Assembly (NCBI RefSeq): GCF_035594765.1
Contig: NC_085842.1
Location: 226,249,747-226,313,746 of the forward strand
Direction: 5' to 3'
DNA: 64,000 bases
Origin: Anolis carolinensis
Lineage: Eukaryota
The position numbers and the translations under genes are program-made. Below the pieces are notes generated by a model, which was not told where the DNA came from, made no database searches, and saw only the letters and a list, made by a program, of their open reading frames with translations. Numbering within the stretch: the stretch's first letter is position 1; each line of letters begins with the position of its first letter. Positions 22,988-50,269 of the stretch are shown here, piece by piece.

Positions 22988-23294
22988 CTAAAGGGAAATT
23001 ATTTTTATGGTTAGTTTTTAAAATCACATTACCTTTTACATATGTTATTTTTAAATTAAAATCATTGTTTTAGTTTGCAGACTTTGGACTACTATGGACA
23101 GGCCTCACTCCATTTTCCATCACCATTGCTCTAGACTCCTTCATGCCTTGGCCCAGCAACGGGAAACAGTCCTTCCCTCCATAGTCTAGTTGCTATTGCA
23201 GTGGTCTGGGCAGCCAGCATTTGTGGACTTAATACCCTTCACCACTACCATTCCCTTTTCTTTAGAAAGTTAATCTCTATAATCAGATATCTAT

Positions 23295-23579
23295 AGATTA
23301 CCTCAAAGACAACTATGTTTAAAGGACAAGCAGAAAACTGGAAGAAAGAAGATCGGAAGTCATCCATTCCCTCCCCCCCTCCCATTAGAAATTACCCTTC
23401 CCTAACCCCCTTTCCTCCCCCCCCCCTCACCATTTGCTATAGAACTATTACATCCCCTCACCCCAACCCACATCCCGCCCCTCAGTATCTTTCCCTTGGA
23501 CAACCCCTCCCCAACCTTCCCATAGGGCCACCAATGTAACTCACAAAAAAGTTTTAATAAAAATAAAAATTAAAAAAAA
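23295..23579 (+). mobile_element. Short 5'-truncated L1-like 3' end with 14-bp TSD
   Basis: C-rich 3'UTR, AATAAA and polyA; flanked by AATCAGATATCTAT at 23281-23294 and 23580-23593. Confidence 0.75.
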
Positions 23580-23877
23580 AATCAGATATCTATGTAGTCC
23601 TTATATGTGTCTATGTGCCTTCAAATAAATATTAATATTTTATGTTTAATGACAAAAAAGGTTGAAGTGGTTTTTCATTTGTATAAGTTAAGTCTAGTCT
23701 GGTCTGACTCTGGGGGTTGGTGCTCATCTCCATTTCTAAGCCGAAGAGCCGGCGTTGTCTGTAGACACCTCCAAGGTCATGTGGCCGGCATGACTGCATG
23801 GAGCGCCGTTATTTGTATACTCATATCTTAATGCATTTGTGTTGTTTTAATTTGTATTGTATCATTTTTGTATTGTA

Positions 23878-26908: not shown

Positions 26909-27085
26909 CTGAGTCCTCCACAGCCCGCCAGGTTTGAGGAAGTTCTGCCAGAAGCCCTCAACCAGGCCGGGCTTCTCCGGCGGCAAGACGGGCTCCCTCG
27001 GGCTCAGCTCCTGGTCCTTGAGCCAGCGCCGCCGGAGCTCCCTCAGCTGCTGAAGCCGGAGCTTCTCGTCCGGCGTGTAACCCAT
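26909..27085 (-). CDS. NDUFB6: NDUFB6 (complex I B17 subunit) exon 1; may begin at upstream in-frame ATG 27130
   Basis: [36 protein letters not shown] is near-identical to NDUFB6; donor CAG|GTGAGC, phase 0. Confidence 0.96.
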
Positions 27086-27120
27086 CACCGACCGCGGAGG
27101 ACCCCCACCGCCGCGCTCTA

Positions 27121-28411: not shown

Positions 28412-30032
28412 GGTACTGTGTAGAGCCAATCTCTGTGTCCCTCCTTCAAGCAGCCACTTCTAGAATGTCATACTGCTTTGCCATGGTAGCAAAATTATTA
28501 TTATTACTATTATTATATTTCATAAAATAAATATATTTATGACATGGTGCAACATAGGAAAATGCTGCCTAAAGTCTACCATATCACCTGGGAGTATGAT
28601 TTTACAAAAACTATCCAGACCCTCCTAGAAAACCGCAGATCTTGTATGTGGAGTCTACTTTTTTTTGGATGTGAGGTCATATCAGTTTGGTCATATGTTA
28701 TGACCACTCTATTTTCACATTTGTGGGGTTTTAGTAGTATTAGTGCAGTATTCAGACAAACAGTCCCCAGGTTATATATATTAGCTTTGGATAGCATAGG
28801 GAAGGATGAACACCCCTGTGGTGTTTCCTTTGCTGTCTGCCTCTGTTCAGAAGATTTCGCCTCACTTTCCATGCCTGTGAGAATTGGATTTTGAACAATT
28901 AGGATTGTTGTGGAAACTATGATTGGTCATAAAGCTTCAGCGGAGGCACATTTCCCCATGATAACTTCAGGGAGTGAATTTCCCTTTGGGAAATGTTGTC
29001 TCGCCGCTGTTGTTAACTATGAGTAGTTTGTAAGTCGGATATTTGTAAGTCGGGGGCTGGCTGTAGCTAGGAGTCACATTTAGGTATAAAGAAGAGTTTT
29101 AGATGAGGGATGCTCAACCTGTAGTGGTAACGTACATTTTGGGAGCATACATTTGGCATGCAAAAAGTGACCCAAGTCCTACCTCAACTCCCTGAAAGAC
29201 ATGGAATATTTTAAAATTGACAAAGCATAGTCTGTGTTCATTACTTTGGAAGAGAGCCGTAAGAATAACTATTTTAACCAAGGCTCTAATGCACAACTTT
29301 CCAAGCTGTGTGTTGCCTCTAGTTCCTATGTGTGTCATGTGAAAAATGCTTGCCCACTCCACCCCCACAAACAAAGGCTGGTTCTGATCAAGTGTAAGTC
29401 TGTTATAACAATGATGTTTGTGCTGAACTCCATGGAGCGGCTATAAAGAAAACTACACAAGAATCAACTATAGGACATAAAAAGTGTAAAAAAAATCCAA
29501 ACCTCATTTAAAAACTACTATATAGTATTAAATTCTTATAAGGGGTTGGTTTAACCTTCACTTTGCCAGTAAAACTGAATTACCATGTTGCAAAAGGATG
29601 CATGTCTAAAATTCGTGTCACCAACATGAAAGGTTTGGAAATGCTGCTCTGATGTATTGTGCATTTGCCACTACATACTTTGGTCCAGAGAGAAATGTTT
29701 ATTGGAAGCATGCCTTCTTCCAGTGGACTGGCTAGAACCAAAAATATCCAAACAACTAAAGTCAGTTTGCCAGTATGCTTGCTTTGCATTGATGGAAATT
29801 TTATTGTCTTCATCCGTATTTCTCAAGCAGACCACAGAGGAAGTTTGTGCACAGTCAGAACATACTGACATCAAGGGATCTTGACGTAATCATACATTTT
29901 CTCCCTCCATGTTTCCCTTTCCCACCCTCCCCTAGGAAAAAAAATCAGAGCAAATTTTGTGGGTTCTTCACACTTTGCTCAGTACAATGAGTGTTCACAT
30001 TCCTGTTTTCCTTTATTCGTCTTCCAAGATCT

Positions 30033-30176
30033 TCACTTTTGGCCTTTCTCTGAAGGGACTGAATTTCCAGACATGTTCCCATGCACTCTGACCCGATAAA
30101 TGCAGGTAAATTCCGCATTGCCCCAGTTACTTTGCACCTTGAATTTCATACAAAGAAATTGCTTTGCAGCTTCCTT
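30033..30176 (-). CDS. SUN3-like exon 10 (KEAAKQFLCMKFKVQSNWGNAEFTCIYRVRVHG...K*)
   Basis: Diagnostic SNWG...TCIYR.RVHG SUN terminus; tatttcag| acceptor; TGA at 30033-30035; minus-strand AATAAA at 30012-30017. Confidence 0.97.
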   Translation of the reverse strand, partial: KEAAKQFLCMKFKVQSNWGNAEFTCIYRVRVHGNMSGNSVPSEKGQK

Positions 30177-31122
30177 CTGAAATACAGAGAGGGCAAAGAG
30201 AGACCAAATAAAATAGAAGCTTGCACCACTTTATGAGTACAGTACAGTCATCCTACATTTGCAGTTTTGACTTTTGCAGATTTGATTATTTTTTGTGGAG
30301 GACCCAAAGCAGTAGTTCTAAATCTTTAGCCCTTCAAGTGTTTTCGACTTCAACTCCCAGAAATCCCAGCCATCTTACCAGCTGTTAGGAATTGTGGGAG
30401 CTGAAGCTCAAAACACCTGGAGGACCAAAGGTTGGGAACCATTGACCTAGAGGTTTCTAGAGAGAACATCTCTCAAGGAATCTCTTGGTCCTCCAAATGT
30501 GATTCTGTGATCAGCTTCCAATGGAAATCAATGATAGAGTTGTGTTGGAAAAACTAATCCCACTTTATAACTGTCATGATATTATGTGGAAATCAACAAT
30601 TTGTAGTTTGGTGAGACACTATAGCTTTCTAGCCAGGAATTCTAAATACCTTTTTCTACAATGAATCCATAACATCTGATATGGAATCATGGTGCCATAA
30701 TATGAAAAGCATCCTGTTGTCATTTAACATTGTTTGCACTGCTACTTAAGTACAGAAATGAATAAATTATGGATTTGAGATGCCCCAAGTTATGTAATTA
30801 TGTAGATCCCCATGATCCTCCAGAGCAATTATATGGTATTCTTTGGCTGAAAGCCTAAGATATTGTTGATTTCAATTGCAAAAAGTACAATATCAGATTA
30901 TGCAAAAATTATGCAAAGATTCCTAGAACAGATTCCTCACATTATATGTTGGCCTACTGTGTAGCTATTTTTATGAAGTATGAAAGGAACCTAGGATTGC
31001 CCCTTAGCTGTTCAAAGAGCAATATCTATCGGAAAACCTGTTTAGCACCCCTTTTAGGCCAGCCCATTGGTGTCCAGGGTTTTTTCAACCACGCTTCCCC
31101 ACTGATCCCATTTTCAGGGTAC

Positions 31123-31212
31123 CTGCAGCTGGAATGTCTGGATCGTTTCCTTCTCTATATCATACATGAATGTTCCTAACAAAGTTTCTTCATTGATTTC
31201 ATCATCTATCCC
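31123..31212 (-). CDS. SUN3-like exon 9 (GIDDEINEETLLGTFMYDIEKETIQTFQLQ)
   Basis: LLG.F.YD....IQTF SUN motif; cttccag| acceptor and |gtaccc donor. Confidence 0.95.
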
Positions 31213-31847
31213 CTGGAAGTGAAAAAGAGAATTGGCAGAAATCAATGGCAGATCATTGATACTTCTATGAAGAAGACCAGAACACTGCTTAAGAGCAACA
31301 TAGGAAACTGTGCTTTCCTAAGTCAGCTCAGGGGTCAATTCAGAATCAGACAGGGTTGGTGGCAGCCTTGGATCTAGCAGGAGATGGTCAAGGAAACTGG
31401 ATCAAGGAAACTGGAAGTGAGTAAAGAGAGTGGCTGTCGTCTGGGAAGCAGGCAAGTAGGAAGACAGAAACACCAAAGACACCTTGTCAGAGCCAAGAAG
31501 GAGAGAGAAAAGTCTAGGGATATCCCAAATAAAGCCTGGTGGGTTGTATTTATAATTAAATGAAGAAGAGGAAAATATATTATTTGGAACTGCTGCACTT
31601 GAGAGGACATTATTGCTTTTTGTAACCCCATACAGCAGGATCCTCCTAGGACATTGAGAGTCCCTGTCCAAGACCTGGCAGATAGTTTAGTCTATGCCAA
31701 CCCTCACCTCCTTGGCTTGTGGGGCAATGAGTACTCTGAGTTGGCATCAGAAGAACTGCCAATCAAGTCTTCCCTTCCTTTAAATTATAGTTCTCTGGCT
31801 ATACCTCAGAGGAACAGGTAAATGCTAAGTCGGACGTCAATACTCAC

Positions 31848-32015
31848 ATAAACTGAGAAGTCCTTCAAGGCGCTGGTGACTCCTTTTACAGGAGAGACAG
31901 CCCTGGGGATATGCTGTACTGTGACTGCAGTTGGAAAGATTCTTTCAGGCAGTTTTATGACCACTTGGCCCTCACTTCCATGGAATGCCCAACAGTTTCC
32001 TGGGTAAACATCTGG
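31848..32015 (-). CDS. SUN3-like exon 8 (PDVYPGNCWAFHGSEGQVVIKL...SALKDFSVY)
   Basis: Diagnostic SUN motif PGNCWAF.G; tgtgtttag| acceptor and |gtgagt donor; 168 nt. Confidence 0.96.
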
Positions 32016-32660
32016 CTAAACACAGGAAGCAACTTAAGTGAATAAAATACAATCTCATAACACACATGTTCAACATATATGACTTGACTTCTCAGAGTGA
32101 GCACAGAAGTCTGCTGGGAATTTCCAGAGTTTGGATACTGGAGAGTGGTGGTTCCACCTAACAAGTGGGTTTGCTCTGGGTTTTAGTCTGATTTTTAAAG
32201 GAGCTATCCAGGGTCCCAATTTGTTTAAGAGTAACCATCACCTCTTTGGGTTTTTCCACATTAGTGGTTCTCAGTCTGTGGATCCCCAGGTATTTTGGCC
32301 TACAATTCTCAGAAATCCCAGCCAGTTTACCAGCTGTTAGAATTTCTGGGAGTTGAAGACCAAAACATCTGGGGACCCACAGGTTGAGAACCACTGCTCT
32401 CCACAGAATGCAGAGCAGGAGAGATTGGCTTGTTCTTGTCCTCTGACAGAATAATTTCTTGAGCTAACACTCCTCCTTCATACTAAATCAAAAGAAGGAG
32501 AAGGGTCCAAGGACAAACAATAACTGAGTGAAGGTTTTTGTCCAACCTTATCATCTTGCAATGCCACCTATGAAAATTGGCATGATGGCATATATTTAAT
32601 GTTCTAAAATATTGTTCTAAAGTTGCTTCTTTTTTTTTTTACCATCAATAAAAACAGTAC

Positions 32661-32776
32661 CTGTAGAATCGTTTCAGGGGGTTTGGCTGTAGAAATGAAG
32701 AAGTATTTATACCAACAGCTCTTTGCATTCTCAGGCTCATAGCTCTTTGAAGTCCTGCTGTGATCAATAGTGGCTC
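32661..32776 (-). CDS. SUN3-like exon 7 (ATIDHSRTSKSY...PPETILQ; KASH-lid region)
   Basis: tctctag| acceptor, CAG|gtactg donor; phase 1 to 0; GA.I..TS.SY and P..ILQ motifs. Confidence 0.92.
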
Positions 32777-33019
32777 CTAGAGATTTATTTTAGGAAGGAA
32801 CGAAAGAAAGAGATTAAAAGAAAGTGCTAACTCCATTCATTGGTAAGGCATAAGGAAGTTTTTCATCAGTTTGATCCATTGCTCCCCTTATCACTGCCCA
32901 TATTACTATCTGTCTATCATTATGCATGTTAAGTCAGCATCTCAAGAAGCTCGTAAAGAAGACAGTTTCTTTCTTCTGGAGGCAAACAATAGCTGGGGAA
33001 TTCTCTCAGATTAATATGT

Positions 33020-33725
33020 TTTTTTTATTTTCAATCTACATATTCATCAAAACAATGAAAAAAATCTACATACATGTATATATGCATGAACCAATACAAT
33101 ACTTCCTAACAACTGTACAATATTTGTATTTGGTTATGCTCTTCCCTCTTCCTACCCCTCTCAGTTTAGTGATTTCCTGTCCCTTAAGTTGGAGACATTC
33201 ATATATAATTCTGTTCTTCCTTCCTATGACATTGTTTTTCTATTCTTTCTTCTGGCCTGATATTTATTATTTATAAATTCCCTGCACTGATTCTAACAGG
33301 TTAAATTACTGTATGAAGCCTTGTTTTTTAAAAAACCTTTCCTTCTTTCTTTTTTTAATACAAAGTTTATAAATTGTTCCCGGTCCTTGATAAAGTTTTT
33401 TGTATTTTTTTCTTTATTCATCATTGCTAATTTGTCAATTCTTCTATTGTTGGGAGGTCTGTCTTCTTCCAGAACTGTGTGTATACTAATTCTTCCTGCT
33501 ATTATCATTGCAGTTTAATGATTTCTTGTTTGTTTATTTGACATTCCCAATAAAAATAATTTGGTCTCCAATTGTATCTTTGATTTTAAAAATTTTTGCA
33601 GTGTTTTTCATACCTTGCCCCAGAATTCTCGTTTTTTTTACAAGACCACCACACATGAAAGAAAGTTCCTTCGTGTTCTTTACATTTCCAGCACTTGCTG
33701 TTTCTTCCCTTATACATTTTAGCTA
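33020..33725 (-). mobile_element. L1-clade LINE 3' fragment
   Basis: [19 protein letters not shown]-terminal ORF2 motif; A-rich on the minus strand. Confidence 0.75.
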
Positions 33726-34916
33726 GTTTTGCTGTGGTGTGCGTGGCTTCCCCCCATAGACTGTGTGGCAACATGGGAGCTCTTCCGTGTTACCCTGACG
33801 GCAGCATGCGCCGGCTCCACCCTGCTTCACCCATCGAACCAGCACAGCATCATGTGATGGGAGACGGCCGGCTTCGTGAGAAGCCTGAGCTAAAATCGGC
33901 GTTGAGCGCCAATTTAGCTCAATGTGATGAGGCCATTAGTCTAATACTAAAACAATGGTTGTGCTCAGAGATCCAGTAATGTAGCAGCACATTGTCCCAG
34001 CCACTGGATGCCTGCAGTGGCTTCTTATGGCTCTTCTTGATTTGTTTTCTTGTTATCAGGGGCCCTATTGGTTAATGAACTACATGTTACAGAGGGTGCA
34101 TCTACACTGCAGAATGAATGTAATTCAACATCACTTTAACTGTCATAGTTGAATGCTATGGCATACTAGGATTTGTAGTTTTGTGAGGCACCAGCATTCT
34201 TTGACAGAAAAAAAAACTAAAGACATTGTAAAATTAGAACTCTTGTGACCCCATAGCACTGAACCATGGCATTTAAAGTGGTGTCGAACTGCATTAATTC
34301 TACAGTGCAGATGTACTCTAATTCTCCCAGCCATTTTTGCAATCCAAATTTCTCTGTCTTGGCTTCCTTCTACTTTTTCTTTAGGGAAAAAAGGCTAAAA
34401 AGTGAGGAAAAGCCAGAAAGCAGAGGAATCATGAAACACGTTCTTCCCTCTTACTGATTTTCTTCTTCTCTCCTCTAGCCCTTGTGACAGTATTATAAAA
34501 CAACTCTTATAACATATTTATACAAAAAAATAAGACGTCAATATGGTTTGAACCACCCAAAATAACTTCTACCATAGTCTTATGTGTTCACTCAAAAGCA
34601 TGTTCTGCCAGAAGTTGAGGTTTGGATAGCTCTTCAGATGTTGGACTGCAACTCCCATCATCACTAGACCTCCTAGGCAACTGTGAAGCATGATAGGAAG
34701 TGTGGTTCAGCAACTTCCTGACAGCAAGAGCTGTTCTGCTGTGGAATATGCTGCCTCAGGGGATGGTTGAGTCTGCTTCTTGGGAATATTTGAAGAATCA
34801 CCCATTTCCCAGGCTTGTTCTAAGTGCATACTTAGAATAGTTACCTTACTGGGCTTGCTAAACTAAAAAAAGGAAGAAAAAATTAATTCAAATAAAAGTA
34901 TACAGTCAACCATTAC

Positions 34917-35001
34917 CTATTGTTTTTTGAGCCCAATCTGGCATTTGTACATGATCCTCATATGTCTTCCTAAAAGCTTGATTAATCATTTCAAGCACTT
35001 G
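34917..35001 (-). CDS. SUN3-like exon 6 (QVLEMINQAFRKTYEDHVQMPDWAQKTIG)
   Basis: tttctttacag| acceptor, G|gtaatg donor; equivalent to the EDxV..DYAL.S.G motif that leads into SUN domains. Confidence 0.9.
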
Positions 35002-36158
35002 CTGTAAAGAAACGGAAAACCCATCAGCTTAGTCCAAAGGCATGATTATTCCAAATACCAATGACATCCATTCTGTAATGTAAATTATAACTGAACCTCG
35101 GACTGTAGAAATCAGTGCCAGCTAGATCCTACCATTGCTCTGTTTTTTACAAAGTGTGCTGTCATTTGGTCTGGTTCAGAAAAGAGCTTCTTAAGCGAGA
35201 ATGCATTTTTCATGGATTGGTCATCACAGTTTTGAAGCTATGTCATAACTGTTAGGAGAACCTGAGTACTCCAAACCTTTGCTTCATAAATGTAAGATAC
35301 AGGAACATGACAGGATGTCTCATCTGCACTAATATATAATGCAGTGTAGCAATTGCATTAGCCCTGTGTGTCCATACAACACACACAGGCTAAATCAATT
35401 GAACCCAGGGTAAATCACTTAATCTGGTTAAAAGAACACTGGTAAAGGTTCAAATCCTGAAAATCTTCAACATTACCAGAGAGTCACCTTTGAGGACCGA
35501 AGAGATTCCTAGAAAGATTCTTTCTAGATATTTCTAAATCCTCTGGTGGTTTGAATCAAATCTGTGAATAATTATATCCACAAAAGTGAAATCTGCAAAT
35601 ATTGAGAGCCAACTGTAATGCCCAGGATCTTTTGCATTAACCAAGGGTTTTTCAATTTAGAAAAAAAATATATTCTGAGGTTACAATATGTGAAAACCAT
35701 TGATCTTGATTAATGAATGTCAGTGGTTTGAAAACTTCAAGCATTACTATTAAGGACATTATGTTAGGGCATGGGAACAAACCTAGTTCTACCTTTTTGG
35801 GGTTTTCAGACAGAGAGGGTATCTCCCAATACAAGCATGTAGCCAGGGGGTGGGGGGTGGGGGTGGGGTTGAGGGGCTTCAGCCCCCCCCCCCCAATTCT
35901 CAGAGTGGTCCGCGAGGAGGCCTTACATTTATTATTTAAACTGTTATGTTTATTCATATCATGATCTGATTACCATGCTCAATATATCCCATATGCATGG
36001 GGAGTATTGGGATAACGATACAAAAGGTTTGCGAGGGTAGATCCTCCCCCACCCAGACTCAGCCCCCGACTCAAAATCCTGGCTACGGGCCTGTCCCAGT
36101 ATAAAACATAAATTAACAAAGTACAGATAACTCTAAGGGTCATTTTACAGTTTCCTAC

Positions 36159-36318
36159 ATCTTTGTTCTCTCCTGGGATGTCATTTTCCTTGAGGATTTG
36201 TTTTATAGAATTCGGGATGCCTTTCTGGATGCTCTTCATTTCAGCTTGCAGATGTGCTGTCCGATTTTTAATTACTGGGATTTCCTGAATTTGCTCTTGA
36301 AGGCCATTTTGAGACTTC
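36159..36318 (-). CDS. SUN3-like exon 5 (coiled-coil, KSQNGLQEQIQE...GENKD)
   Basis: tttttcctcattccaag| acceptor, GAT|gtagga donor; phase 2 to 0; lies within track ORF 35979-36383. Confidence 0.85.
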
Positions 36319-36969
36319 CTTGGAATGAGGAAAAAGGAAACAGTAGGATTAGAAATTCGTCCTTTGGCAAAACTACGCTGCAACCTGCAGTGATACTGTC
36401 ACAGAAAAAAATCAGCAAATATTTGTGAATTACCTCAGATTGAAACTAAACAATCTGACACATATAATTTACAATGCCAAATATTGTCTAGTTGAGTCCC
36501 CTCTGGGGTGGGAAAGGCGGAATAGAAATGAAGTAAACAAACAATCAAACATATAGTTTTCAGAGGTGTGCTCCCTCGAGTGACAAAATTTAATTTTCCC
36601 AAGTTACTAGAAATTAAGACATATATCTTGCACTTGTTAGATCCCAGTGCCCATTAAGACACAAGGAATTATTGTTGTTGTTGTTTATTTATACCCAACC
36701 TTTTCTCTCCACAAGGAGACTCAAAGCAGCACCACACTATTTAAATCAAGAAGTATAGCACCCAAGGCTGGCCAAGTTATTTCTGAATTTTTTTCCTTCG
36801 TGTATCGTTTTGTTTCGACGGTTGGTTTACACAAAACGAATGGTGACATTTTTGTAAGAATCGAGGGAACGACACAAAAATGAAAACCTCAGCTATTGTG
36901 CTTGCTTTTGTTTTCTTTTCATACTGACAGAGGGCTGCTGCTTTCCCACTATAGCTGATGGGTGTTCAT

Positions 36970-37415
36970 AATAATATTAATATAAATAACGATAGTTACT
37001 CTGGCACTCTAAGCTGAGTCTGAAAGAGGAGTTCCTCCCAATTCCATCCGATGTGTATTAATGGGTCTTGATGATAATATTTATATTAATATTGAGAACA
37101 GAAGTTATTCTGGCACCCTAAGCAGAGTCTGGGAGAGCAGCTCCTCCCAATTCCATCCGATGTGTATTAATTGTCTTGATTATAATATTTATATTAATAT
37201 TGAGAACAGAAGTTATTCTGGCACCCTAAGCCGAGTCTGGGAGGGCAGTTCCTCCCAAATCCATTCGATGTGGATCGATGGGTCTTGATGGTAATATTTA
37301 CATTAATGTTAAGAACAACAGTTATTCTGGCATCCTAAGCCAAGTCTGGGAGGGCAGTGCCTCCCAATTACATCCGATGTGGATCAATGGGTCTTGATAA
37401 TAAGAATAATATTAA
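36970..37415. repeat. ~108-bp tandem repeat, about 4 copies, in SUN intron 4
   Basis: GTTA(C/T)TCTGGCA recurs at 36995, 37104, 37212 and 37321. Confidence 0.85.
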
Positions 37416-37823
37416 TAAAAATAGTGCTCTGGGGAAGACCCAAATGTTTTAAAAGTTGGTGGGCTAAAGGGGGTCGAAATGCCATCCATGTGTGGCGATT
37501 TTCACCCCTCTGGCCTGAAAAAAGAGCTGGGGGGAGGGGGGGAGGGAGTCTTGGAAGCCCTCCCATTGCAGCCAATGTTAAAAAAAAATTGTTTTTTTCA
37601 TAAGCCAGACAAAAATTCGCGTCATATAGGTGGCCCATTTTTGTTAGTGGGACATAAATATGAAAATGAGATGACATGAATGAAACTACACAAAATGAAC
37701 AGCAATTCTATATGAATGCACACCTCTAATAAATAGTATACACCCATAATGTCTTTTTCATGAAGTAGTAATGCCTAGCCTAGAGTAAGCAGGATTTAAG
37801 TAGAGTCTTTAAAACCCTCTTAC

Positions 37824-37864
37824 CATAATGATTTCAGCTCACTTTCATACCGTAGCGCCAGCTC
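37824..37864 (-). CDS. SUN3-like exon 4 (ELALRYESELKSLW)
   Basis: ttttccctctgatag| acceptor, TG|gtaaga donor; 41 nt, phase 0 to 2. Confidence 0.8.
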
Positions 37865-38403
37865 CTATCAGAGGGAAAACAAGCACATAGATATCAATAT
37901 TAACAAGATATGGGAACCTTTAAGGGCAAGCGATTCTCATCTCTTGAGGTAGGAATGCCGTTCATAGTATAAACAGACTAGACTTTAGATTTGTCTCCTT
38001 CCAAAGTGGGTGAGGATGGGGGAAAGAGAGCAGGAAGCAAGGAGAGAATGTGTATATACGTATGCGCCTTCAAGTCCCCTATCCACTTAAGGCAACCCAA
38101 TGAGTTCATTGGGATTTCTTAGGCAAGGAATACGCATCAGTAGAGGTTTTGCCAATTTCTTCCTCCAAAATATAGCCTACAGTGCCTCGTATTTATTGGC
38201 AGTCTCTTATCTGTGTGCTAAGCAGTGGTTCTCTACCTGTGGGAACACAGGTGTTTGACCTACAACTCCCAGAAATCCCAGCCAGTTTACCAGCTGTTGA
38301 GATTTATGGGAGTTGAAGGCCAAAACATTTGGGACCCACAAGTTGAGAACCACTGTGCTAAAGAATCTTTCAGAGTTTTTCCCTAGCCCAGAAAGGTGCT
38401 CAC

Positions 38404-38459
38404 CTGTGATGAGAAACCATCTGTTAATTTTAGGTATTGACAGTAGCAATAAATGGTAC
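38404..38459 (-). CDS. SUN3-like exon 3 (GTIYCYCQYLKLTDGFSSQ)
   Basis: tctcctacag| acceptor, CAG|gtgagc donor; phase 1 to 0. Confidence 0.8.
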
Positions 38460-38942
38460 CTGTAGGAGATAAGAAAACAATGCTTGTTAATCATTAATAA
38501 CCATTATCACAGTGGGACAAAAGGTTTTTACTGCAAGGGATTTTTTTTTTGCAGTTTCTAGCATTACTTACCTACCTCTGATTAAACCTGCAGGATTTTG
38601 ACAAATAATTTTGTTGTTTGTGCCTTCAAGGTGACTCCAGTTTATGCCAATCCTATCATGGGTTTGTTCAGAGAGGATTTCCTATTGCCCTTATCTGAGG
38701 CTGAAGAAATATGACTCGTCCAAAGTCACCCAGCGGATTTTTGTGCTTGAATAGAGATTGGAATCCTTGACCTCCGAGAGCCCAGCACTGAAACCACTAC
38801 ACCAGAGCTTTATTATGCATCATGACACGTTAGTGTGTTGGCTGTAGTGCATAGGGGTGCTGTGTAAATTTAATGAGAAACCTCAATATGAAATAAGCAA
38901 TAAAATATTTTTAACAAAAAATAAAAGATTTTCATGAGATAG

Positions 38943-39801
38943 TGTTGTGGTTCAGCCAGATGAAGACGAGGGGATTGGGGTTTCAGGACCTGGGAGAGTG
39001 CTAGATGGTTCTGTAGATGAGGAAAAGGAGGGGGTTTTGGAGCAAGATGCTGTCTCTGAGATGGAAGTTGAAAGTGGAACTATTTTGGAATCCAAAAGGC
39101 AGCAAGAGCACCTTTCACCCACAAGGAGTGTAGCAACCCATGATAACATTAGCTCATCCATGGGAGCAGCTGGCTTAGACAGAAATACTAGGCTGCTTCT
39201 GAGGTTGAAGAAATTCAAGTGCAGGAAATCGGAAAGGATCCATGAGGAAGAAGTGCAGAAGCAGGCACCTCAAGGTCAAATAAATACTTTTTGTAGTCCT
39301 TAAATCACAGAGAGTTCTGTTGGGATTTTAGATCAGGCAACGTTGCTATCAAAAAGAACTCTAGTCTCATTCCCAGTTCATGCCTTAGTTCAAAACCCAA
39401 GATTCATATCATGTTTTGATTCTGTTTTATGGATATACCTTTGGATTCATGCTCATGTTTTGCTTCGTTTTATGGATTTATTTTGGAATTAATGTTCATG
39501 TTTTAATCCTTGTTTCCTAGATTTGCTCTCATGTTGGATTCTGGGGATTCCTGTTCCTTGTCTCTGAAACAGCTTTGAGCTGTTTGGATTATTATCTTCG
39601 GATTGTTTTCCTATTAACAGTTTGGTCTGTTCTATTGCTTGTGGGACTTGTTTCCTTTATTAACTCTTGGATTTTACCTTTCCAATTTCTTATGGTGTTT
39701 TTCCCATTTTATATATGTTTTTATCAATAAACTGTTTTACTATTACGTCTGGATTCTTGGTTGGTGCTAAGAGCAAGGTGAACACTTGCTGAGGTGCAAC
39801 A
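38943..39801 (+). mobile_element. Solo LTR (Gypsy-like) in SUN intron 2
   Basis: TGTTG...CAACA termini, AATAAA at 39726, near-perfect 5-bp TSD GATAG/GATAT. Confidence 0.75.
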
Positions 39802-40705
39802 GATATGTTATGTGCCCAGACATTTTGTTATTGCAATTTCTGTTTGTGTCTCTATGTCTTATAAGGGGTTGGTTAAACCTTTGTTTTACTAGTAAATTAT
39901 GCATGTCCAAAATGTATATCACCAACATAAAATGCTTGGAAGGCTCTGCACGAAAAGAGCGAAAAGGGGAGCCAGGAAGACAGTTCCATCTTGTCTCTTT
40001 TGCCATCAGTTGGGGGCCCTCCCCCAGTAACATGCTATGCTAATAATAATTATATTATATATATAATATTTATTATATATTTTATATAATATACAATATA
40101 ATATAATATACAGTAATATATAATATAATATACTGTATATACATATAATATTTATAATAATATTATAATGTAATAAAATACTAATAATAATTCAATACAA
40201 TAATATTAATTATATATTTATATTACATGTAATATTAATATTGTGTAGTGATATAGTACAATATAGTAATTTAATGCTAATATTGTGCTATGCTAATAAT
40301 ATAATATATTGTATGTACATATAATTTGTAAGCTGCTCTGAGTCCCCTTTGGGGTGAGAAGGGCAGGATATAAATGTAGTAAATAATAAATAAATAAACC
40401 AATACTTACTCACAAGCACTTCAAAATAGGTCAGGTTGTCAGAGTGAAACAAGATATGACTGAGCAGGGATTTGAACCTTAGGTCCCTTCTACACTGCCA
40501 TCTAATCCAGATTATCAAAACAGAACATCCACATTATCTGCTTTGAACTGGATTATATGAGTCTGCACTGCCATATAATCCAATTCAAAGCAGATAATTT
40601 GGATTTTATATATCAGCGTAGAAGGGGCCGTGGAATTAATCATATAGGTGAGTGAATGAACCAGTAGACACTTGAATGGGTCACTCTTGAATTATGAACA
40701 CTCAC

Positions 40706-40776
40706 CACAAACGACCGGAACTGCTATTATCAGGAACCTTGAAACTTTTACAAAGTTTGCCATGGTGAATTGGTCT
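40706..40776 (-). CDS. SUN3-like exon 2 (DQFTMANFVKVSRFLIIAVPVVC; start of TM helix)
   Basis: tttcctctacag| acceptor, G|gtgagt donor; phase 2 to 1. Confidence 0.8.
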
Positions 40777-41922
40777 CTGTAGAGGAAACAAAGCAGTGTT
40801 GTCATTAAACAGAAACAGATAGACGTCTTGGAAACCAACTATGGAAGGAGTCCTCACAAAAGTGTAAGACATTTTCTGACATCTCTTGAAGAATGATATT
40901 GGACCAAAGATGGAAGAAACAAGTGCTAACATTTTCAGTCATTCATTAGATTTTACATAAGCTCCTCTGCCTTCATCTCTGTCCCTCCCCACCCTTTTCT
41001 TTGTCTGGCATAAGATAATGTAGCATGTGACATCATTGGCCCATATAAGAAAAATCTTCGAGTGCTATATTACACAAAGGTATTTCCTAGTTCTGCCTAG
41101 AAATGAACCTGGGACTTTCTAAATGCAAAGCCTTGTGTAGAGCTTTACTACTGAAGATCCAAAGTCCCTCACAAATCTTGTTGACATGGCTTTGCAAGGT
41201 AGCCGTTTCTTGTTTCAATCAAACAGAATATGGGAAAGTTATTTTGTTAGACTAAAGAACATGGGAAAGCTATTTTATTGAACTAAAGTTCACCAAATCT
41301 CTTAGCCAGCATGTCCTGTAGTTATGATGTTTTAGGACTATGGGAATTGTAGTTTTTGACAAAAAAAAAAAAAGATAAAGAGGTGGATTTTTTTTTCAAG
41401 GCATGAAGAAATCTCCAAAATTGTATTTTTGACCAGTAGGGGTTCTGAGATGAATGCTATTGAAAAAGCAAGATACTTTCATGGATCTCACACATACTTA
41501 CATTGTGCAGATGCAGGTGTGTAAAAGATATTTTGGGATGCAGAAAATCACCATTAGCAATAGGCAAGGAATGTTGCATATGGTTTCTGGAAATGAAAAT
41601 GAAATCACAAAGCATTTAAAAGCCCAGACTAGATGAGATGTATTAAATAATGCCAGCAATCCCGCAAGGCCAGTTAGTATGATTATTTCTCATATTTAAG
41701 ATAGTTGATCCAGGAAAGAGCAACCTCAGACCTGAAAACATAGGACTCTGAGGCTGGATCTACACTGCCATATAATCCCGTTTTTGAATCCAGATTATCT
41801 GCTTTGAACTGGATTATACGAGTCTACACTACGATGAAATCCTGATCAAAACAGATAATTGGATTCAGAAACTGAGTTATATAGCAGTGTAGATGGGTCC
41901 CCAGATTCACAGTTACAGAGTT

Positions 41923-44605
41923 CATAGAATCATAGAATCATAGAATAGTAGAGTTGGAAGAGACCACATGGGCCATCCAGTCCAACCCCCTGCTAAGAAG
42001 CAGGAAATCGCATTCAAAGCACCCCCGACAGATGGCCATCCAGCCTCTGCTTAAAAGCCTCCAAAGAAGGAGCCTCCACCACGGCCCCGGGGAGAGAGTT
42101 CCACTGTCGAACAGCCCTCACAGTTAGGAAGTTCTTCCTGATGTTCAGGTGGAATCTCCTTTCCTGTAGTTTGAAGCCATTGTTCCGTGTCCTAGTCTGC
42201 AGGGCAGCAGAAAACAAGCTTGCTCCCTCCTCCCTTTGACTTCCCTTCACGTATTTGTACATGGCTATCATGTCTCCTCTCAGCCTTCTCTTCTGCAGGC
42301 TAAACATGCCCAGCTCTTTAAGCCGCTCCTCATAGGGCTTGTTCTCCAGACCCTTAATCATTTTAGTCGCCCTCCTCTGGACGCTTTCCAGCTTGTCAAC
42401 ATCTCCCTTCAACTGTGGTGCCCAAAATTGGACACAGTATTCCAGGTGTGGTCTGACCAAGGCAGAATAGAGGGGGAGCATAACTTCCCTGGATCTAGAC
42501 GCTATTCCCCTATTGATGCAGGCCAGAATCCCATTGGCTTTTTTACCAGCCGCATCACATTGTTGGCTCATGTTTAACTTGTTGTCCACAAGGACTCCAA
42601 GGTCTTTTTCGCACACACTGCTGTCAAGCCAGGCGTCCCCCATTCTGTATCTTTGATTTCCATTTTTTCTGCCGAAGTGAAGTATCTTGCATTTGTCCCT
42701 GTTGAACTTCATTTTGTTAGTTTCGGCCCATCTCTCTAGTCTGTCAAGATCGTTTTGAATTCTGTTCCTGTCTTCTGGAGTGTTAGCTATCCCTCCCAGT
42801 TTTGTGTCGTCTGCAAACTTGATGATCGTGCCTTCTAACCCTTCGTCTAAGTCGTTAATAAAGATGTTGAACAGAACTGGGCCCAGGACGGAGCCCTGCG
42901 GCACTCCACTTGTCACTTCTTTCCATGATGAAGACGACGCATTGGTGAGCACCCTTTGGGTTCGTTCGCTTAGCCAATTACAGATCCACCTAACCGTAGT
43001 TTTGTCTAGCCCACATTTTACTAGTTTGTTTGCCAGAAGGTCGTGGGGGACTTTGTCGAAGGCCTTACTGAAATCCAGGTACGCTACATCCACGGCATTC
43101 CCTGTATCAACCCAACTCGTAACTCTATCGAAAAAAGAGATCAGATTATTCTGGCATGACTTGTTTTTGGTAAATCCGTGTTGACTATTAGCAATGACCG
43201 CATTTGTTTCTAAGTGTTCGCAGACCACTTCCTTAATGATCTTTTCCAGAATTTTGCCTGGTATTGATGTGAGGCTGACCGGACGGTAATTGTTTGTGTC
43301 GTTCTTTTTTCCCTTCTTGAAGATAGGGACCACATTCGCCCTCCTCCAATCTGCTGGGACTTCTCCCGTTCTCCAAGAACTCTCGAAGATAATTGCCAGT
43401 GGTTCTGAAATAACTTCCGCTAGTTCCTTCAGTACTCTTGGATGTAGCTGGTCTGGCCCTGGGGACTTGAATTCGTTTAGAGTGGCCAGGTGTTCCTGGA
43501 CAACTTGTTTCCCTATTTGGGGTTGGATTTCCCCCAATCCTTCGTCCATTCCATGTTACTGAGGTTGAAGATGGCTTTCTTTTTGTGAGAAGACCGAGGC
43601 AAATAAGGCATTAAGTAGTTCTGCCTTTTCCCTGTCCCGTCGCCATCACCCCATCTTCTCCTTGCAATGGCCCTATCGCCTCCTTTTTCTTCCTTTTTCT
43701 ACCAACGTAAGCAAAAAAGCCTTTTTTGTTGTTTTTTATGTCCCTGGCAAGCCTGAGCTCATTTTGTGCTTTAGCCTTGCGAACCTTTTCCCTACAGGTG
43801 TTGGCTATACGTTTGAATTCTTCTTTGGTGATTTCTCCCCTTTTCCACTTCTTGTGCATGTCACTTTTGAGCTTTAGCTCAGTTAGAAGTTCTTTGGACA
43901 TCCATTCTGGCTTCTTTGCACTTGTCTTATTTTTCTTCTTTGTTGGCACTGTTTGCATTTGCGCCTTGAGTGTTTCACTTTTGAAAAACTCCCATCCATC
44001 CTTAACTCCCTTGTTTTTTTATATCGGCGTCCATGGAATGCCGCTTAGTAATTCCTTCATTTTTTGGAAGTCAGCTCTCTTAAAGTCCAGAAAGCGTGTT
44101 TGACTTGTCTTAGTTTCAGCATTAATTTGTATTGCAAACTGCAGGAGCACATGGTCACTTGCCCCTAAGGATCCAACCACTTCAACTGTATTGATCAGGT
44201 CTTCCACATTTGTTAAGATTAGATCAAGAGTTGCTGATCCCCTTGTTGCCTCTTCTACCTTCTGGACCATAAAATTATCTGCAAGGCAAGTGAGGAATTT
44301 GTTGGACTTTGTACTCTTGGCTGAGTTTGTTTTCCAGCAGATATCGGGATAATTGAAATCGCCCATGACTACTATATCTCTTCTTTGTGCCTGTTTGGTC
44401 AGCTGTTGACAGAAGGCTTCATCAAGTCCTTCATTCTGACTCGGAGGTCTGTAGTAGACACCCACGACAAGATCTTTTTGAGTCCCGGTTCCCTTGATTC
44501 TTATCCAGATGCTTTCAAGCTGGTTTCCCGGATTACAGTCTTGCATTTCTTCTGCAACGTAACTGTTTTTGACATATAAAGCTACCCCCCCCCTCCTCTC
44601 CCCTT
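41923..44605 (-). mobile_element. CR1 LINE, 5'-truncated, near-complete ORF2 (APE + RT), in SUN intron 1
   Basis: RT motifs ([18 protein letters not shown]) at 42014-43549; APE motifs (GVYYRPP, MGDFNYPDICW, SDH) at 44019-44546; (TTCTATGA)n 3' tail. Nonsense codons at about 43556 and 44019 and a frameshift near 43640. Confidence 0.96.
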
Positions 44606-47600
44606 TGTTCTATTTCTGTGAAAGAGGCTATAGCCCTCAATGGTTAAATTCCAGTGATGGGAGTCATCCCACCAGGTTTCACTGCACTATAGTCCATATA
44701 GTTCACTGCACTATAGTCCATACCAAAAGAATCATGCAATTCAAATGCTTTGCAAGCAAAGGTCTAAGGACTTTATTATACCTGGCTGTTGAGTCATGAC
44801 AACTGTGATGTTAAAGCAAATGGAAACATATCACTATTGGAACAATCATGTTCACACCCCACTGCAATTGCACTATACTGCAGCTTTGGTGATGTGAATT
44901 CTCATGACCAATCTTCCTACCTACGATCCCCTAATAGGCACATCTGCACTGCGATTTTTCTATTTTGCTGCAACTATACAGTTTTGATAATCCTGAAAAA
45001 TCTTCATCTGCTTTGCAATATTGGGATTGCAGCAGAAGAAAGCTATTGAAATAGTGACAGAAGAATAGCAGTAGATTTTTCTCTTCAATGAAAAGAGATG
45101 ATCCAATCATGATTCAAGAGTAAGGAAACTGAAACAGATATGAAGTTGTGTGATAAACCCAAGCAAAGGTGTAATTGCACTTTATTATCAACCTTGTGTG
45201 ATAAAGACCTAAGATACCTCCTGCCATAGCTCGAAAAATGTATACCAAGTCTGAGTCATGATCCTACATGCCCAAGATTCCCAGTCACCAAGTAAAATTA
45301 GTTAATTATATTAATCAGACTATTTAAAAAAACAACCCAGTCAAAATATTGCCACCCAAAGAACTTGAAAAAAATTACCCATCTGGACCATAATTCCCCA
45401 AATCCTTCAGTGGTCATGCTAAATCTGTAGTCCAAAAAGATAGATTTTCTGGGGTCTGAGTGCTGTATTGTGAATCCAGAATGGTATAGGATGCAACAAA
45501 CACAGTTAAAGTGAAATCATAGTGTTGTTATTAAGAAGTGCAAAAAAGTTCATAGTAGCAAATACACCAGCCAATGTAGCATAGTACATTAGCAAAATTT
45601 CTGTACAAATTCAGATCTTCATTTCGCAAAGACAGGAAGCTAGATGTTTTTATGAAACCTTCAATAAAGGGAGACATAGACACTAAAAATGCATCCACTC
45701 ATCTTAAAGGGCATCAATTGGTTATCACAAAACTATAGAATTTGAACAGAAAGTATCCAAATCTTGGAGGAGTAAGTATTGACATTCATCACTATCAGAA
45801 CTTTTAAAGTGGGTATCCAACACACTGAATCTATTTTGGGATAGGTTGCAGCCCTTGGAGATCTTCTTTAAAGTTCACATTTTAATCCAAAACAAACTGT
45901 GATGCAGGGCACATCTACACTGTAGAATGAATGTAGTCTGACACGACTTGAACTGCCACGGATCAATGCTATGATAGATTTATTTATTTATTGGTTAGTC
46001 CTCTGACCATATCAATGGTTCAATGCTATGAGATCCTGGGGTTTGGAATTTGGTGAGGCACCAGGACTATTTGCCAGAGAAGGCTAAAGATCTTATAAAA
46101 CTATAGCTCTCATGATTCCATAGCACTGAGATAAAGTGCTGTCAAATTGCATTCATTCTAGTGTGTAGATGAACCTGTAGATGCCAATTGCTGTAATTGT
46201 AATGACTTTAGTGATCAGCTAGTGCATCTCCTCGCTCAGTGTAGACTGAAGTTGCAGCATCATTGAACAATGCCAATCCATCATCTGTCAAATATCAGCA
46301 ATGATTAAAAGTTGTCCATTTTCTAAAAAACCTCACACACCCAGAAAGTTTCTGTGTTAATGCTGCAATGCGAATAGCCCCCAAAGCTACCAAGCAGAAG
46401 ATGCTTTACAGCTAGTATGTCCTTTGCTCCATTTTTTAAAGGCAGAAGAAGCAATGGGAAAACACAAATGTCACGTGGACACTTCGCATAAATGCCATGC
46501 ATTAGGTAAGGGGATCCACAATCAAAGGCATATCTGGAAGGACCACTATTGTTAAAAGGTGTGAGATGCATACTTAACACATTCTTCTGAGATGCTGTGG
46601 ATGACCTTGACAACAAGGTGCTAGAGCTGGTCTCTCTTGCAATGACCTCTCTGATGAATGCTGTTTGGCATCTGTCTGGTGAATGTCCTGTAAAGAAATG
46701 TCATCTCATTATCAGCCAGGCATCACCAGCATCCAAGACTGAATAATTCTGTCTGAAAGTTAAACATACCTTATCAGAGGAATGGGTTGATTCTACTTCT
46801 GTTTCCATCTGACTTCTTGTTCTTTTCTCTCTTTATTGTTATAAATTGAATGTTTGTGATCCAAAGTATCTGGATTTGGCCATCAACTTAGGAGATAGGG
46901 CTCATCTACATCAGGCAAGTCAGCCTGATATAACTCTGCCTTAGAACAACCCTGGATCCAACACAAATGTGCTTAATCTGGGGCCACTGTTTAAATAGTC
47001 ACCTACTGGGCTGTCACCTTCCATGTGTCTCCATCGCCACCACTCTTAGCTGGTCATGGAGTTGCGTCTGAGTAAGAGGCCACTGAGGTTGCCTCTGCTG
47101 TTGTCCAAAAGGAGCACTTGTGTAACCAGAAAGGATGGTGTGGATCTCCCCTCCTTTTCACTCAGATATCAGCAGAGGCAATTGCAGTGGCTAGGTGCTT
47201 GGATGGAGGTACATGACTGACAAAGAGCAGTAGCGGGGCAACATTATACAAGCCATTCCCTTTCCTTGTTGTAATCCCAGTGAAGGGTGAGAGTGATGGC
47301 AATGGTTTGCATTTGGATTGCAGATCATTCTGAATCAGAGCCTCACGTAAACTCTGAAGGATCCTCCAAATTGCCTAAAGCATGAGAAAATCAGAGTATA
47401 ACCAAAGCCTGGAAGATGGAATGCATTGTGAAGACTGCCAACAGTCCATTCACAGTGAGTACTGCGGGCTGGGGATTGGTCTATGTAGATAAACCAATTT
47501 GAAGAGAAACGGCACAATAATACAACTCATATGTTTCGTGGGAGATGATGTAAAGGACTGACTGCAAAAGCCAGTGTGGTTTGATCGCTGAACTGTGACT

Positions 47601-49075
47601 CTGAGAGGCCAGCGTTTGCTAAACTATTTAGTTATGGAAGCCCACTGGGTAAAACCCACTTACTTGAGTAAGTCACTCTCACAGCCTCATCAGACAGTGT
47701 GATTTTTAACATCTTAGGATGCTTTCATCCTGTCTGGGGGACGGAGGCCTATGTCGGACATCACATGATGTTGTGTGACTTCCGGCATAGGCTGTGACCC
47801 CAACTGGGGTGAAACCGTTGCCAGACACTTCCCTAGCAACATGGGAGGTTTCTCAGGTTGTGTTGCCTCTAATGGAGCCAGCATGGGCTTCCCCGCAATG
47901 GCGATGCTTTCCCCATGTGATGGGGAAAGCGTCACCAAGAGGGAGCTGTGAATGGGGTGACAGAGTTGCCCCGTTTCTCCCTCTTTCCTCCCTGGAAGCC
48001 TGGTGAAGCGGGATGCTTCACCAGGGCTTTAGGATGAGGTCCTCAATCATCCTCAGAGGAAGGCAGTGGAAAAAAAAACCTCTCTGATGAAATCTTACTA
48101 AGAAACATCTTGATAGGTTTACCTTAAGTTAGACTTGATTTGAAGGCACACAACAACAATAACAAGAAATGACTATAAGATTAAATATGCAATGACGTGA
48201 AAAGAAGTCAACACATTTGTTAAATCTGTACATGTTGATCTCAGTTATGATTGGTTCCACACATTGTCTTAGTTCAGTATGTCCAAAAAACCCCTAAGCC
48301 CTATCTTACAGAGACTATGTCCATTTATCCAAATTCTGTGTCAAGAAGATGGCAAACCAACTGCTTAATATTTTTTTTTCAACTTACCCCCATCTTGCCC
48401 CTCTTCATCATCTACAGTCATTTGACTAGATGAAGTCATTGAATTTTTGGTGTAATTGCCAGCAGAGTTGCGCAAGTACCAGCTGGAAGACAAACACAAT
48501 GGCATATTTGAAAATTTAAAATATGTCCTTTTTTTAAAAAAAAAAAAATGGAAAGGTTTTTCTAAAACTTCACAGAAGTTCAGGAAAGATAGCCTGTCTC
48601 CAATCCTCCATGGTTGTTGTAAAGAACAATTATGCTCTTTTAGTTGCTACTCCCTCCATATTTCAGTGGTGTAATTCCAATTTGAGTGGATTTCTAGTAG
48701 ACTCATTGGAGTACACCTATTGAATCCATAAAATCTGTATGATTATATAGGACAGTTTATTACTCTTAAAATCAATTAATGATTTAAGATAGCTGTTTAG
48801 TGAGTGGCAGCCTACTATGACACATGCGTAACCACTTGAAAAAAATTTTTTTATATATATATCTCTATTGTGTAAAGGACTTTACCACAGAGATTTGCCA
48901 GACAGAAATCTGAGAAAGGTGAACATAGATACAATTCTTTCCACCTCTTAAAACAATCTTTTCTATACTATGTCATCATCATTGTGAAGGTAAGCATTGG
49001 CTCATTGTTCTTCTTATGTTCTTTTTGTCTGTTTCCCAGAAGAGACACACAAAAACTAACACTCAGCCTCTCTAC

Positions 49076-49200
49076 CTTTTTGCCGGGGTACTGCTTGATC
49101 CTGATGATCCACTAGGATGATCATCACAAACATCTGGATTATCTTGAAAGGCCTGTTTTCGCTGGTCTGGACTTCTTCGCACAGAACGTTTTCCATTCAT
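49076..49200 (-). CDS. SUN3-like gene exon 1 (MNGKRSVRRSPDQRKQAF...SSTPAK)
   Basis: ATG, basic/Ser-rich nucleoplasmic-type N-terminus, AG|GTAGAG donor in phase 2, matching the next exon. Confidence 0.65.
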
Positions 49201-50269
49201 TGTTGAAAAGATGAAGTGCGAATTGGCTATATTTTCATAGAAATCTCTTTGGTTCTTCTGTTGGGATTATAGACAACAAAAACCAACATGAAAAAACAGC
49301 ACACACAAGAAAAGCTTCACTTTCAATAGGCCAGCATCAAGTGATATCCATGGTCTTTCCCATGTATTTCTGCCAGATGTTCAGAAAGTGATGTCATAAA
49401 AGAACTCTGTAGTGAGAGAATTATGATGGCTTCATGACATCACAAAAGAAATCCAGTTAGGATTGCGTTGTTTCAGTGCTGTGGTGGTTAGAGTATGGGG
49501 GTATGGGTGTGTTGTTTTGTGATATGTGATGTGCTGGGGAAAGTATTTAATTTGACAATAACGTTATTCTATTCTATCCATGTATAACTGCTACATTCCT
49601 CCTTGGACTCAATAACACCATCACTACCCACATCAAGGAAAATTTGTGTCATGCATTTCTGGTATAGAATCATTAAAGCATTGTATTGGATTCCAAAGTG
49701 TAGGGCAGGAATGTCATGTTTTGTCTCATCCCAACATTCTTGAACAGGTATGTAGAAGCAGTAATATAAAGCATGTGCCTTGTATGTAGAAGGTCACTGC
49801 CTTAGTTGAACTTCTTCCTTAGACTGAGAACCTTATTGCACAAAACTGTCATTCCACAGGAGCCACACTATCATAGATTTTTCTTCCTGGGTTATAAATG
49901 TCATTTCCTAATTGGTTTTATCATAAAAACATGGAAAAAGTTTATTAAACTTCCAAAATGTCATTGTTGCGGGACATACTGAAGTGCTATAGTTTTTCAA
50001 TGAATATCTTGTAGAGTCTCAACCAATTCAACATAGTTTGTGGCAGGCGCAAAAACGAAATTTATGGACAATAATAGCAACTTTCAAAGTAAGTGCCCTG
50101 AGTCTCCTTTTGGTGAAAAGGACAGGATACAAGTACTGTAATAAATAAATAAATATTAAACTAAAAATAACATTTTCAAAACAGGAACAGAAAATTTTTC
50201 AAATTTTGTTACATAGTGGAATGGATACATACTAGGATGAGCACCTTTGAAACAACACCTCTTTTCATA

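What the first reader, a model, noticed from the sequence alone, without database searches (positions are those of the whole stretch)
30012..49200. Hidden intact 10-exon SUN-domain (SUN3-like) gene upstream of NDUFB6
Seen: ten minus-strand exons (125, 71, 56, 41, 160, 85, 116, 168, 90 and 144 nt), all GT-AG with compatible phases. They join into a stop-free 351-aa protein: basic/Ser-rich N-terminus, one TM helix (FLIIAVPVVCGTIYCYC), coiled coil, and a full SUN domain (PGNCWAF.G, LLGTF.YD, SNWG..FTCIYRVRVHG), followed by AATAAA. Only exon 5 appears in the ORF track. Established: short single-TM SUN proteins (SUN3, SPAG4/SUN4, SUN5) are spermatid LINC-complex components. As I recall, mammalian SUN3 is on a different chromosome, no SUN gene neighbours TOPORS-NDUFB6 in mammals, and this exon/phase pattern resembles SUN3. 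Inference: a sauropsid- or squamate-specific SUN3-like paralog, or an ancient paralog lost in mammals, possibly involved in shaping the elongated squamate sperm head.
Basis: partly seen in the sequence, partly recalled or inferred. Interest (0 to 1): 0.85.

Follow-up and report, generated by a model that had tools for sequence, protein, structure and literature searches.

The report
Lizard counterpart of sperm SUN4/SUN5
This is an intact 13-exon lizard gene for a sperm-type nuclear-envelope anchor protein, already listed in databases for related reptiles as 'SUN3-like', which most likely is the single reptile/bird counterpart of the two mammalian genes that shape the sperm head (SUN4) and fasten it to the tail (SUN5).

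Summary
The gene is real, but the model and the interpretation need correcting. All ten exons exist with GT-AG and an open frame. It lies upstream of NDUFB6 there and in python too. It is not squamate-specific: orthologs occur in turtles, crocodilians and birds. It is not relocated SUN3: lizards have a separate SUN3 (AU p=0.018). Trees place it as sister to mammalian SUN4/SPAG4 plus SUN5 (96/92 and 97/92; four shared residues; same 13-exon phase series as SUN5; two hydrophobic segments as in SUN4). Best reading (about 0.7): the unduplicated sauropsid pro-ortholog of SUN4 and SUN5, a spermatid LINC protein, misnamed by automatic annotation. A lineage lost in mammals is not formally rejected (p=0.08-0.12). 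No earlier scan note covers this gene.

The parts
49076..49200 (-). exon 1 (125 nt coding, start ATG at 49200)
   Evidence: same size in A. sagrei and python
   Evidence: 29 of 31 codons identical to A. sagrei
   Evidence: AG/GT and size kept in A. sagrei and python
   Evidence: 85 nt also in python and turtle
40706..40776 (-). exon 5 (71 nt); start of the second hydrophobic segment, the likely transmembrane helix (about aa 148-170)
38404..38459 (-). exon 6 (56 nt); end of the transmembrane segment
37824..37864 (-). exon 7 (41 nt); start of the luminal helix
36159..36318 (-). exon 8 (160 nt); coiled-coil region
34917..35001 (-). exon 9 (85 nt); helices preceding the SUN domain
32661..32776 (-). 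exon 10 (116 nt); KASH-lid region
31848..32015 (-). exon 11 (168 nt); SUN domain
   Evidence: Pfam PF07738 E 1e-14
31123..31212 (-). exon 12 (90 nt); SUN domain
   Evidence: Pfam PF07738 E 9e-4
30033..30176 (-). exon 13 coding part (144 nt, with stop); end of SUN domain
   Evidence: Pfam PF07738 E 3e-9
49435..49442 (.). CRE-like octamer (TGATGTCA on the gene's strand), 242 nt upstream of the ATG
   Evidence: kept in A. sagrei and python at the same spacing to the second site, not in turtle; function inferred only
49389..49396 (.). CRE-like octamer (TGACATCA on the gene's strand), 196 nt upstream of the ATG
   Evidence: kept in A. sagrei and python; function inferred only
   Evidence: kept in A. 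sagrei, absent at that place in python
29698..29703 (-). distal AATAAA, 330 nt after the stop; the more likely poly(A) signal
   Evidence: A. sagrei has one at +329, python at +294; use not tested
42014..44546 (-). LINE (CR1-type by inference) endonuclease and reverse-transcriptase frames inside intron 3; not part of the protein
   Evidence: Pfam RVT_1 E 5e-35, Exo_endo_phos_2 E 3e-12; intron 3 is 4987 nt here against 913 nt in A. sagrei
26909..27088 (-). neighbour: first coding exon of NDUFB6, about 2.9 kb downstream, same strand
   Evidence: Pfam NDUF_B6 E 1e-23; same neighbour in A. sagrei and python

Best explanation
A 13-exon, 449-aa short SUN protein that is the single sauropsid pro-ortholog of mammalian SUN4/SPAG4 and SUN5: the amniote ancestor had SUN3 and one SUN4/5 gene; mammals duplicated the latter, reptiles and birds kept it undivided (with later tandem copies in some snakes and birds). 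[quoted passage not shown]
For: ML tree of the C-terminal 192 columns: sauropsid clade sister to SUN4+SUN5 at 96/92, SUN3 of mammals, lizards and ostrich a separate clade at 97/94; 97/92 after removing birds, SUN1 and long branches. Four columns unite this clade with SUN4 and SUN5 against SUN3, amphibian proteins and SUN1/2 (D282, A308, Q333, V431), one unites it with SUN3, none unite SUN3+SUN4+SUN5 against it. Sister to SUN5 alone or SUN4 alone is rejected (p 0.002, 0.003). A search with the wombat SUN5 SUN domain listed only mammalian SUN5, then SPAG4, and as first non-mammal a member of this clade. Intron phases 2,1,1,2,1,0,2,0,1,0,0,0 are identical in anole, turtle and Tasmanian devil SUN5; bat SPAG4 lacks only the first; platypus SUN3 has the last nine. 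Two hydrophobic segments as in SPAG4, one in mammalian SUN3 (PMC10112980). Ensembl 88 already called 20 chicken genes co-orthologs of Sun5/Spag4, 75-97% testis (PMC6609395). dN/dS 0.32 against A. sagrei. Fold.
Against: The AU test does not reject a SUN3-sister position (p 0.08; 0.05 in the reduced set) or a position outside SUN3/4/5 (p 0.11, 0.12). SUN4 and SUN5 have long stems. Synteny does not help: this gene sits by NDUFB6, bat SPAG4 between a ferlin and a copine gene, so a move must be assumed. The 13-exon plan and the two hydrophobic segments may be ancestral (amphibian proteins and ostrich SUN3 also have two segments), and luminal exon sizes 41/160/85 match SUN3 (41/172/85), not SUN4/5 (23-35/109/76-79). 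Absence of other sauropsid SUN4/SUN5 genes rests on a word-filtered search showing 120 of 398 hits. No marsupial or monotreme SPAG4 was in the tree. That the chicken genes of PMC6609395 belong to this clade was not checked by sequence. Expression and splicing were not shown.
Confidence: 0.7

Rival explanations
1. An old, separate SUN lineage (outside SUN3+SUN4+SUN5) kept by sauropsids next to NDUFB6 and lost in mammals; sauropsids would then have lost or never shown SUN4/5.
For: Not rejected by AU tests (p 0.112 and 0.116). Own locus; about equal identity (45-50%) to SUN3, SUN4 and SUN5; own KASH-lid signature.
Against: 11.5 log-likelihood units worse; no column unites SUN3+SUN4+SUN5 against it; needs two reciprocal losses where the best tree needs none; no other sauropsid SUN4/5 seen.
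Confidence: 0.14
2. A duplicate of SUN3 made before or at the base of amniotes and lost in mammals, i.e. the database name 'SUN3-like' is right.
For: Luminal exon sizes match SUN3; AU p 0.08; one shared column (S353).
Against: 12-14 log-likelihood units worse, p 0.0504 in the reduced set; exon sizes may be ancestral; four columns point to SUN4/5.
Confidence: 0.13
3. It is simply the SUN3 ortholog, moved away from HUS1.
For: Database names; HUS1 linkage of lizard SUN3 could not be shown within 10 kb.
Against: Phrynocephalus has both this gene (P0003, 127-Mb contig) and a SUN3 (P0121, 68-Mb contig), 40% identical; Sceloporus has an annotated SUN3 on another chromosome than its copy of this gene; AU p 0.018.
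Confidence: 0.02
4. A silent or decaying gene, or a chance assembly of exon-like pieces.
For: No spliced reads were obtained; a LINE sits in intron 3.
Against: All 13 exons keep size, phase and splice sites in A. sagrei, dN/dS 0.32; structure kept in python and turtle.
Confidence: 0.01

Closest known systems
RefSeq 'SUN domain-containing protein 3-like' of Anolis sagrei and other reptiles (automatic name)
   Same: One-to-one ortholog: 13 exons of equal size, 449 aa, 397 of 442 whole codons identical, upstream of NDUFB6.
   Different: Only a LINE insertion in intron 3; the name points to the wrong paralog according to my trees.
Mammalian SUN5/SPAG4L
   Same: 13 exons with identical phase series; shared residues D282, A308, Q333, V431; first KASH-lid tryptophan kept.
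   Different: Longer coiled-coil exons (160/85 vs 109/79 nt); second and third tryptophans of the SUN5 'Trp anchor' (10.1101/2025.08.04.668116) are absent; different locus.
Mammalian SUN4/SPAG4
   Same: Similar length (439-449 aa), long disordered N-terminus, two hydrophobic motifs of which the second is the TM in SUN4 (PMC10112980), 90-nt penultimate exon, same shared residues.
   Different: SPAG4 has 12 exons, a shorter coiled coil, and lies between a ferlin and a copine gene.
SUN3
   Same: Luminal exon sizes 41/160-172/85/116/168; short-SUN architecture; 46-49% identity in the C-terminal 190 aa.
   Different: Separate gene in the same lizards; 10 exons and one hydrophobic segment in mammals; HUS1 neighbour in platypus.
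SUN1/SUN2 (solved structures)
   Same: SUN fold and preceding helices (phmmer E 1e-53 to 1e-44; Foldseek E 1e-20).
   Different: Much shorter; lacks the cysteine that in SUN1/2 bonds to KASH (column seen; role from my own knowledge).

Membership tests
SUN-domain (LINC) proteins | C-terminal Sad1_UNC domain, complete | tested here: met
   (A. sagrei ortholog 148 bits, profile 4-131 of 132)
SUN-domain (LINC) proteins | Hydrophobic membrane segment followed by coiled coil before the SUN domain | tested here: met
   hydropathy; long helix 145-240 in the model of the A. sagrei ortholog
SUN-domain (LINC) proteins | [quoted passage not shown] | not testable with these tools
   needs cell biology
SUN4/SUN5 lineage | Forms a clade with SUN4 and SUN5 to the exclusion of SUN3 | tested here: met
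   96/92 and 97/92, but alternatives not rejected by AU
SUN4/SUN5 lineage | No other SUN4 or SUN5 ortholog in sauropsid genomes | tested here: inconclusive
   none among listed hits; search is word-filtered and cut at 120 rows; no genome-wide look
SUN4/SUN5 lineage | Same genomic neighbourhood as mammalian SPAG4 or SUN5 | tested here: not met
   NDUFB6 neighbour versus ferlin/copine for SPAG4; SUN5 neighbours not named by the tool
SUN4/SUN5 lineage | 12-13 exon phase series and two hydrophobic motifs | tested here: met
   may be ancestral, so weak for orthology
SUN4/SUN5 lineage | Spermatid-restricted expression | tested here: inconclusive
SUN5 proper | One-to-one orthology; three-tryptophan KASH-lid anchor | tested here: not met
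   AU p 0.002; only the first Trp kept in most rows
SUN4/SPAG4 proper | One-to-one orthology | tested here: not met
   AU p 0.003
SUN3 | Groups with mammalian SUN3 as its ortholog | tested here: not met
   AU p 0.018; other lizard and ostrich proteins take that place
SUN3 | HUS1-linked locus | tested here: not met
   platypus SUN3 has HUS1 downstream; this gene has NDUFB6

The most novel reading that the evidence does not exclude
A sixth vertebrate SUN lineage, older than the SUN3/SUN4/SUN5 splits or sister to SUN3, kept by all sauropsids (and amplified in birds and some snakes) in place of SUN4/5 and lost in mammals, with its own KASH-lid chemistry.
Probability: 0.2. Interest if true: 0.5.

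Novelty: new member of a known kind. Interest (0 to 1): 0.32.

Why it matters
Modest. The gene is already predicted in public annotations and belongs to a well-studied family. What is added is a correction of identity: if it is the undivided SUN4/5 gene, then the two mammalian sperm LINC functions (manchette coupling by SUN4, head-tail anchoring by SUN5, the main acephalic-sperm gene) arose by splitting one ancestral gene, and a lizard or bird offers the pre-duplication state in which to test that. I found no paper that states this for reptiles, though Ensembl trees implied it for chicken.

Tried and rejected
So no junction was tested with reads. The joined (spliced) protein of the window was not used in any search, tree or fold: exons were searched by reference one at a time, and the A. 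sagrei ortholog P0152 stood in for the whole protein; joining was done only inside one script to check the frame. One human protein returned by a search (P0253) was left out. Contig look-ups for alligator, emu, ostrich SUN3 and Sceloporus SUN3 found nothing on record. NDUFB6 was not within 10 kb of the turtle gene and HUS1 not within 10 kb of Phrynocephalus SUN3, so synteny beyond squamates is open. The wombat SUN5 model was odd (10 exons) and was replaced by the Tasmanian devil's. A paper search for the CRE-like octamer gave nothing relevant. Earlier scan notes held nothing on this gene. Rejected: squamate-specific origin, relocated SUN3, one-to-one SUN4 or SUN5, pseudogene.

Full report
Setting. 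The window is vertebrate DNA with TOPORS (5431-8373) and NDUFB6 (first exon near 27088) on the minus strand. The gene's closest relative found is in Anolis sagrei (397 of 442 whole codons identical, dS 0.14), so the source is most likely another anole (inference).

Observation. The last three match Pfam Sad1_UNC in order. But annotated relatives are 435-458 aa long, and tblastn of them on the window shows three more blocks in the supposed first intron: 48482-48388, 46687-46574 and 41586-41502. They add 98 codons, a multiple of three nucleotides, which is why the shorter model stayed in frame. The 13 exons give 449 aa, the exact length of the A. sagrei protein, and each has the same size and splice dinucleotides there; exons 3 and 4 are also seen with AG/GT in python, and the turtle gene has 13 exons with the same phases. 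dN/dS against A. sagrei is 0.32 overall, 0.29 in the SUN exons and 0.45 in the three added exons (few changes). The gene is real and under constraint.

Anatomy. For whole-protein work I used the A. sagrei ortholog (P0152); the window's joined protein was not sent to any search. The AlphaFold model (mean pLDDT 62) shows a low-confidence, probably disordered N-terminus (1-105), a helix at 106-138, a long helix at 145-240, short helices, and a beta-sandwich from about 325; sequence and fold match SUN1/SUN2 structures. Hydropathy gives two segments (110-128 and 148-166) in all non-avian sauropsid members and in SPAG4, one in mammalian SUN3. In SUN4 the second is the transmembrane helix and the first adds membrane retention (PMC10112980); SUN5 has an amphipathic helix in the like place (10.1101/2025.08.04.668116). 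The KASH-lid is aromatic but has no tryptophan at the column of SUN5 Trp232 in any of 16 sauropsid rows, and the SUN1/2 cysteine before the lid is absent as in SUN3/4/5. Two CRE-like octamers 46 nt apart upstream of the ATG are kept in A. sagrei and python; a CREM-type spermatid promoter is a guess from my own knowledge.

Distribution and synteny. Relatives named 'SUN3-like', 'SPAG4-like' or 'SUN2-like' occur in all main squamate groups, turtles, crocodilians and birds and form one clade (100/96). NDUFB6 is the downstream neighbour in A. sagrei and python; in the turtle no neighbour lay within 10 kb. Platypus SUN3 has HUS1 downstream, bat SPAG4 lies between a ferlin and a copine gene. Lizards have a second, true SUN3: Sceloporus XP_042332863 and Phrynocephalus KAJ7322742, the latter 40% identical to the same species' copy of this gene and on another contig.

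Orthology. On 192 C-terminal columns of 65 proteins (human left out), SUN3 of mammals, lizards and ostrich forms one clade (97/94) and the sauropsid clade is sister to SUN4+SUN5 (96/92); 97/92 without birds, SUN1 and long branches. Four columns support that union, one supports a union with SUN3, none the exclusion of this clade. AU tests reject relocated SUN3 (p 0.018) and one-to-one SUN5 or SUN4 (p 0.002, 0.003); they do not reject sister-to-SUN3 (p 0.08, 0.05) or outside-all (p 0.11, 0.12). A search with the wombat SUN5 domain listed no sauropsid protein above a member of this clade. The intron phase series is identical to Tasmanian devil SUN5 (13 exons); SPAG4 lacks the first intron; platypus SUN3 has only the last nine. 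These structural likenesses may be ancestral and weigh less than the tree. Pairwise identity to SUN3, SUN4 and SUN5 is about equal, 45-50%, which explains the scattered automatic names. Ensembl 88 listed 20 chicken genes as shared co-orthologs of Sun5 and Spag4, 75-97% testis, besides 11 Sun3 co-orthologs (PMC6609395).

Expression. Not shown. The run index lists eleven small runs (61-531 million letters) holding 0.28-0.40 of the words of 29900-33000, six other small runs of the species holding 0.00-0.04, and genome-sized runs holding 0.83-0.90.

How it most likely works. Shown: an intact short SUN protein. Inferred from SUN3/4/5 biology (PMC8812575, PMC5634783, PMC10112980): a type II inner-nuclear-membrane protein of spermatids that trimerises, binds a nesprin, and transmits force between nucleus and manchette and/or tail base. 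As the probable undivided SUN4/5 gene it may do both jobs, perhaps in heteromers with SUN3. Probability about 0.7 for the orthology; the dual role is less certain (about 0.4).

Verdict. Observation partly confirmed (13 exons, not 10). A new member of a known kind, already auto-annotated in relatives under a probably wrong name.

Noticed in passing
window 42014-44546 (-): LINE with endonuclease and 511-aa reverse-transcriptase frames inside intron 3; the intron is 4987 nt here and 913 nt in A. sagrei, so the insertion is recent.
   Followed up: partly
proteins P0004, P0164, P0167, P0176, P0177, P0179; P0190, P0191, P0194-P0196; P0110: Several near-identical copies on one contig in the snake Erythrolamprus reginae and in the birds Morus bassanus and Mycteria americana (neighbouring locus tags): independent tandem amplification of this gene.
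   Followed up: no
L002 about 9930-10023: In the turtle Mauremys an ATG with the same first codons as the lizard start lies upstream of the annotated start but runs into a stop; its first coding exon is only 23 nt.
   Followed up: no
proteins P0007, P0009, P0010, P0012, P0024, P0048, P0075, P0092: Amphibians seem to have short SUN proteins that fall outside both amniote clades (unresolved, 65/89 as one group), compatible with a single pre-duplication gene; Xenopus tropicalis copy is on a 154-Mb chromosome.
   Followed up: partly
window 49389-49442: Inverted pair of CRE-like octamers in a conserved proximal promoter; only 7 such octamers in the whole window.
   Followed up: partly
exons 4-6 (41586-38404): Both hydrophobic segments are rich in cysteines in most sauropsid members; possible lipidation sites, untested.
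   Followed up: no
window 20014-27088 (-): NDUFB6 exons near 27088, 22930 and 20030 form an intact-looking gene; TOPORS main exon at 5431-8373.
   Followed up: partly
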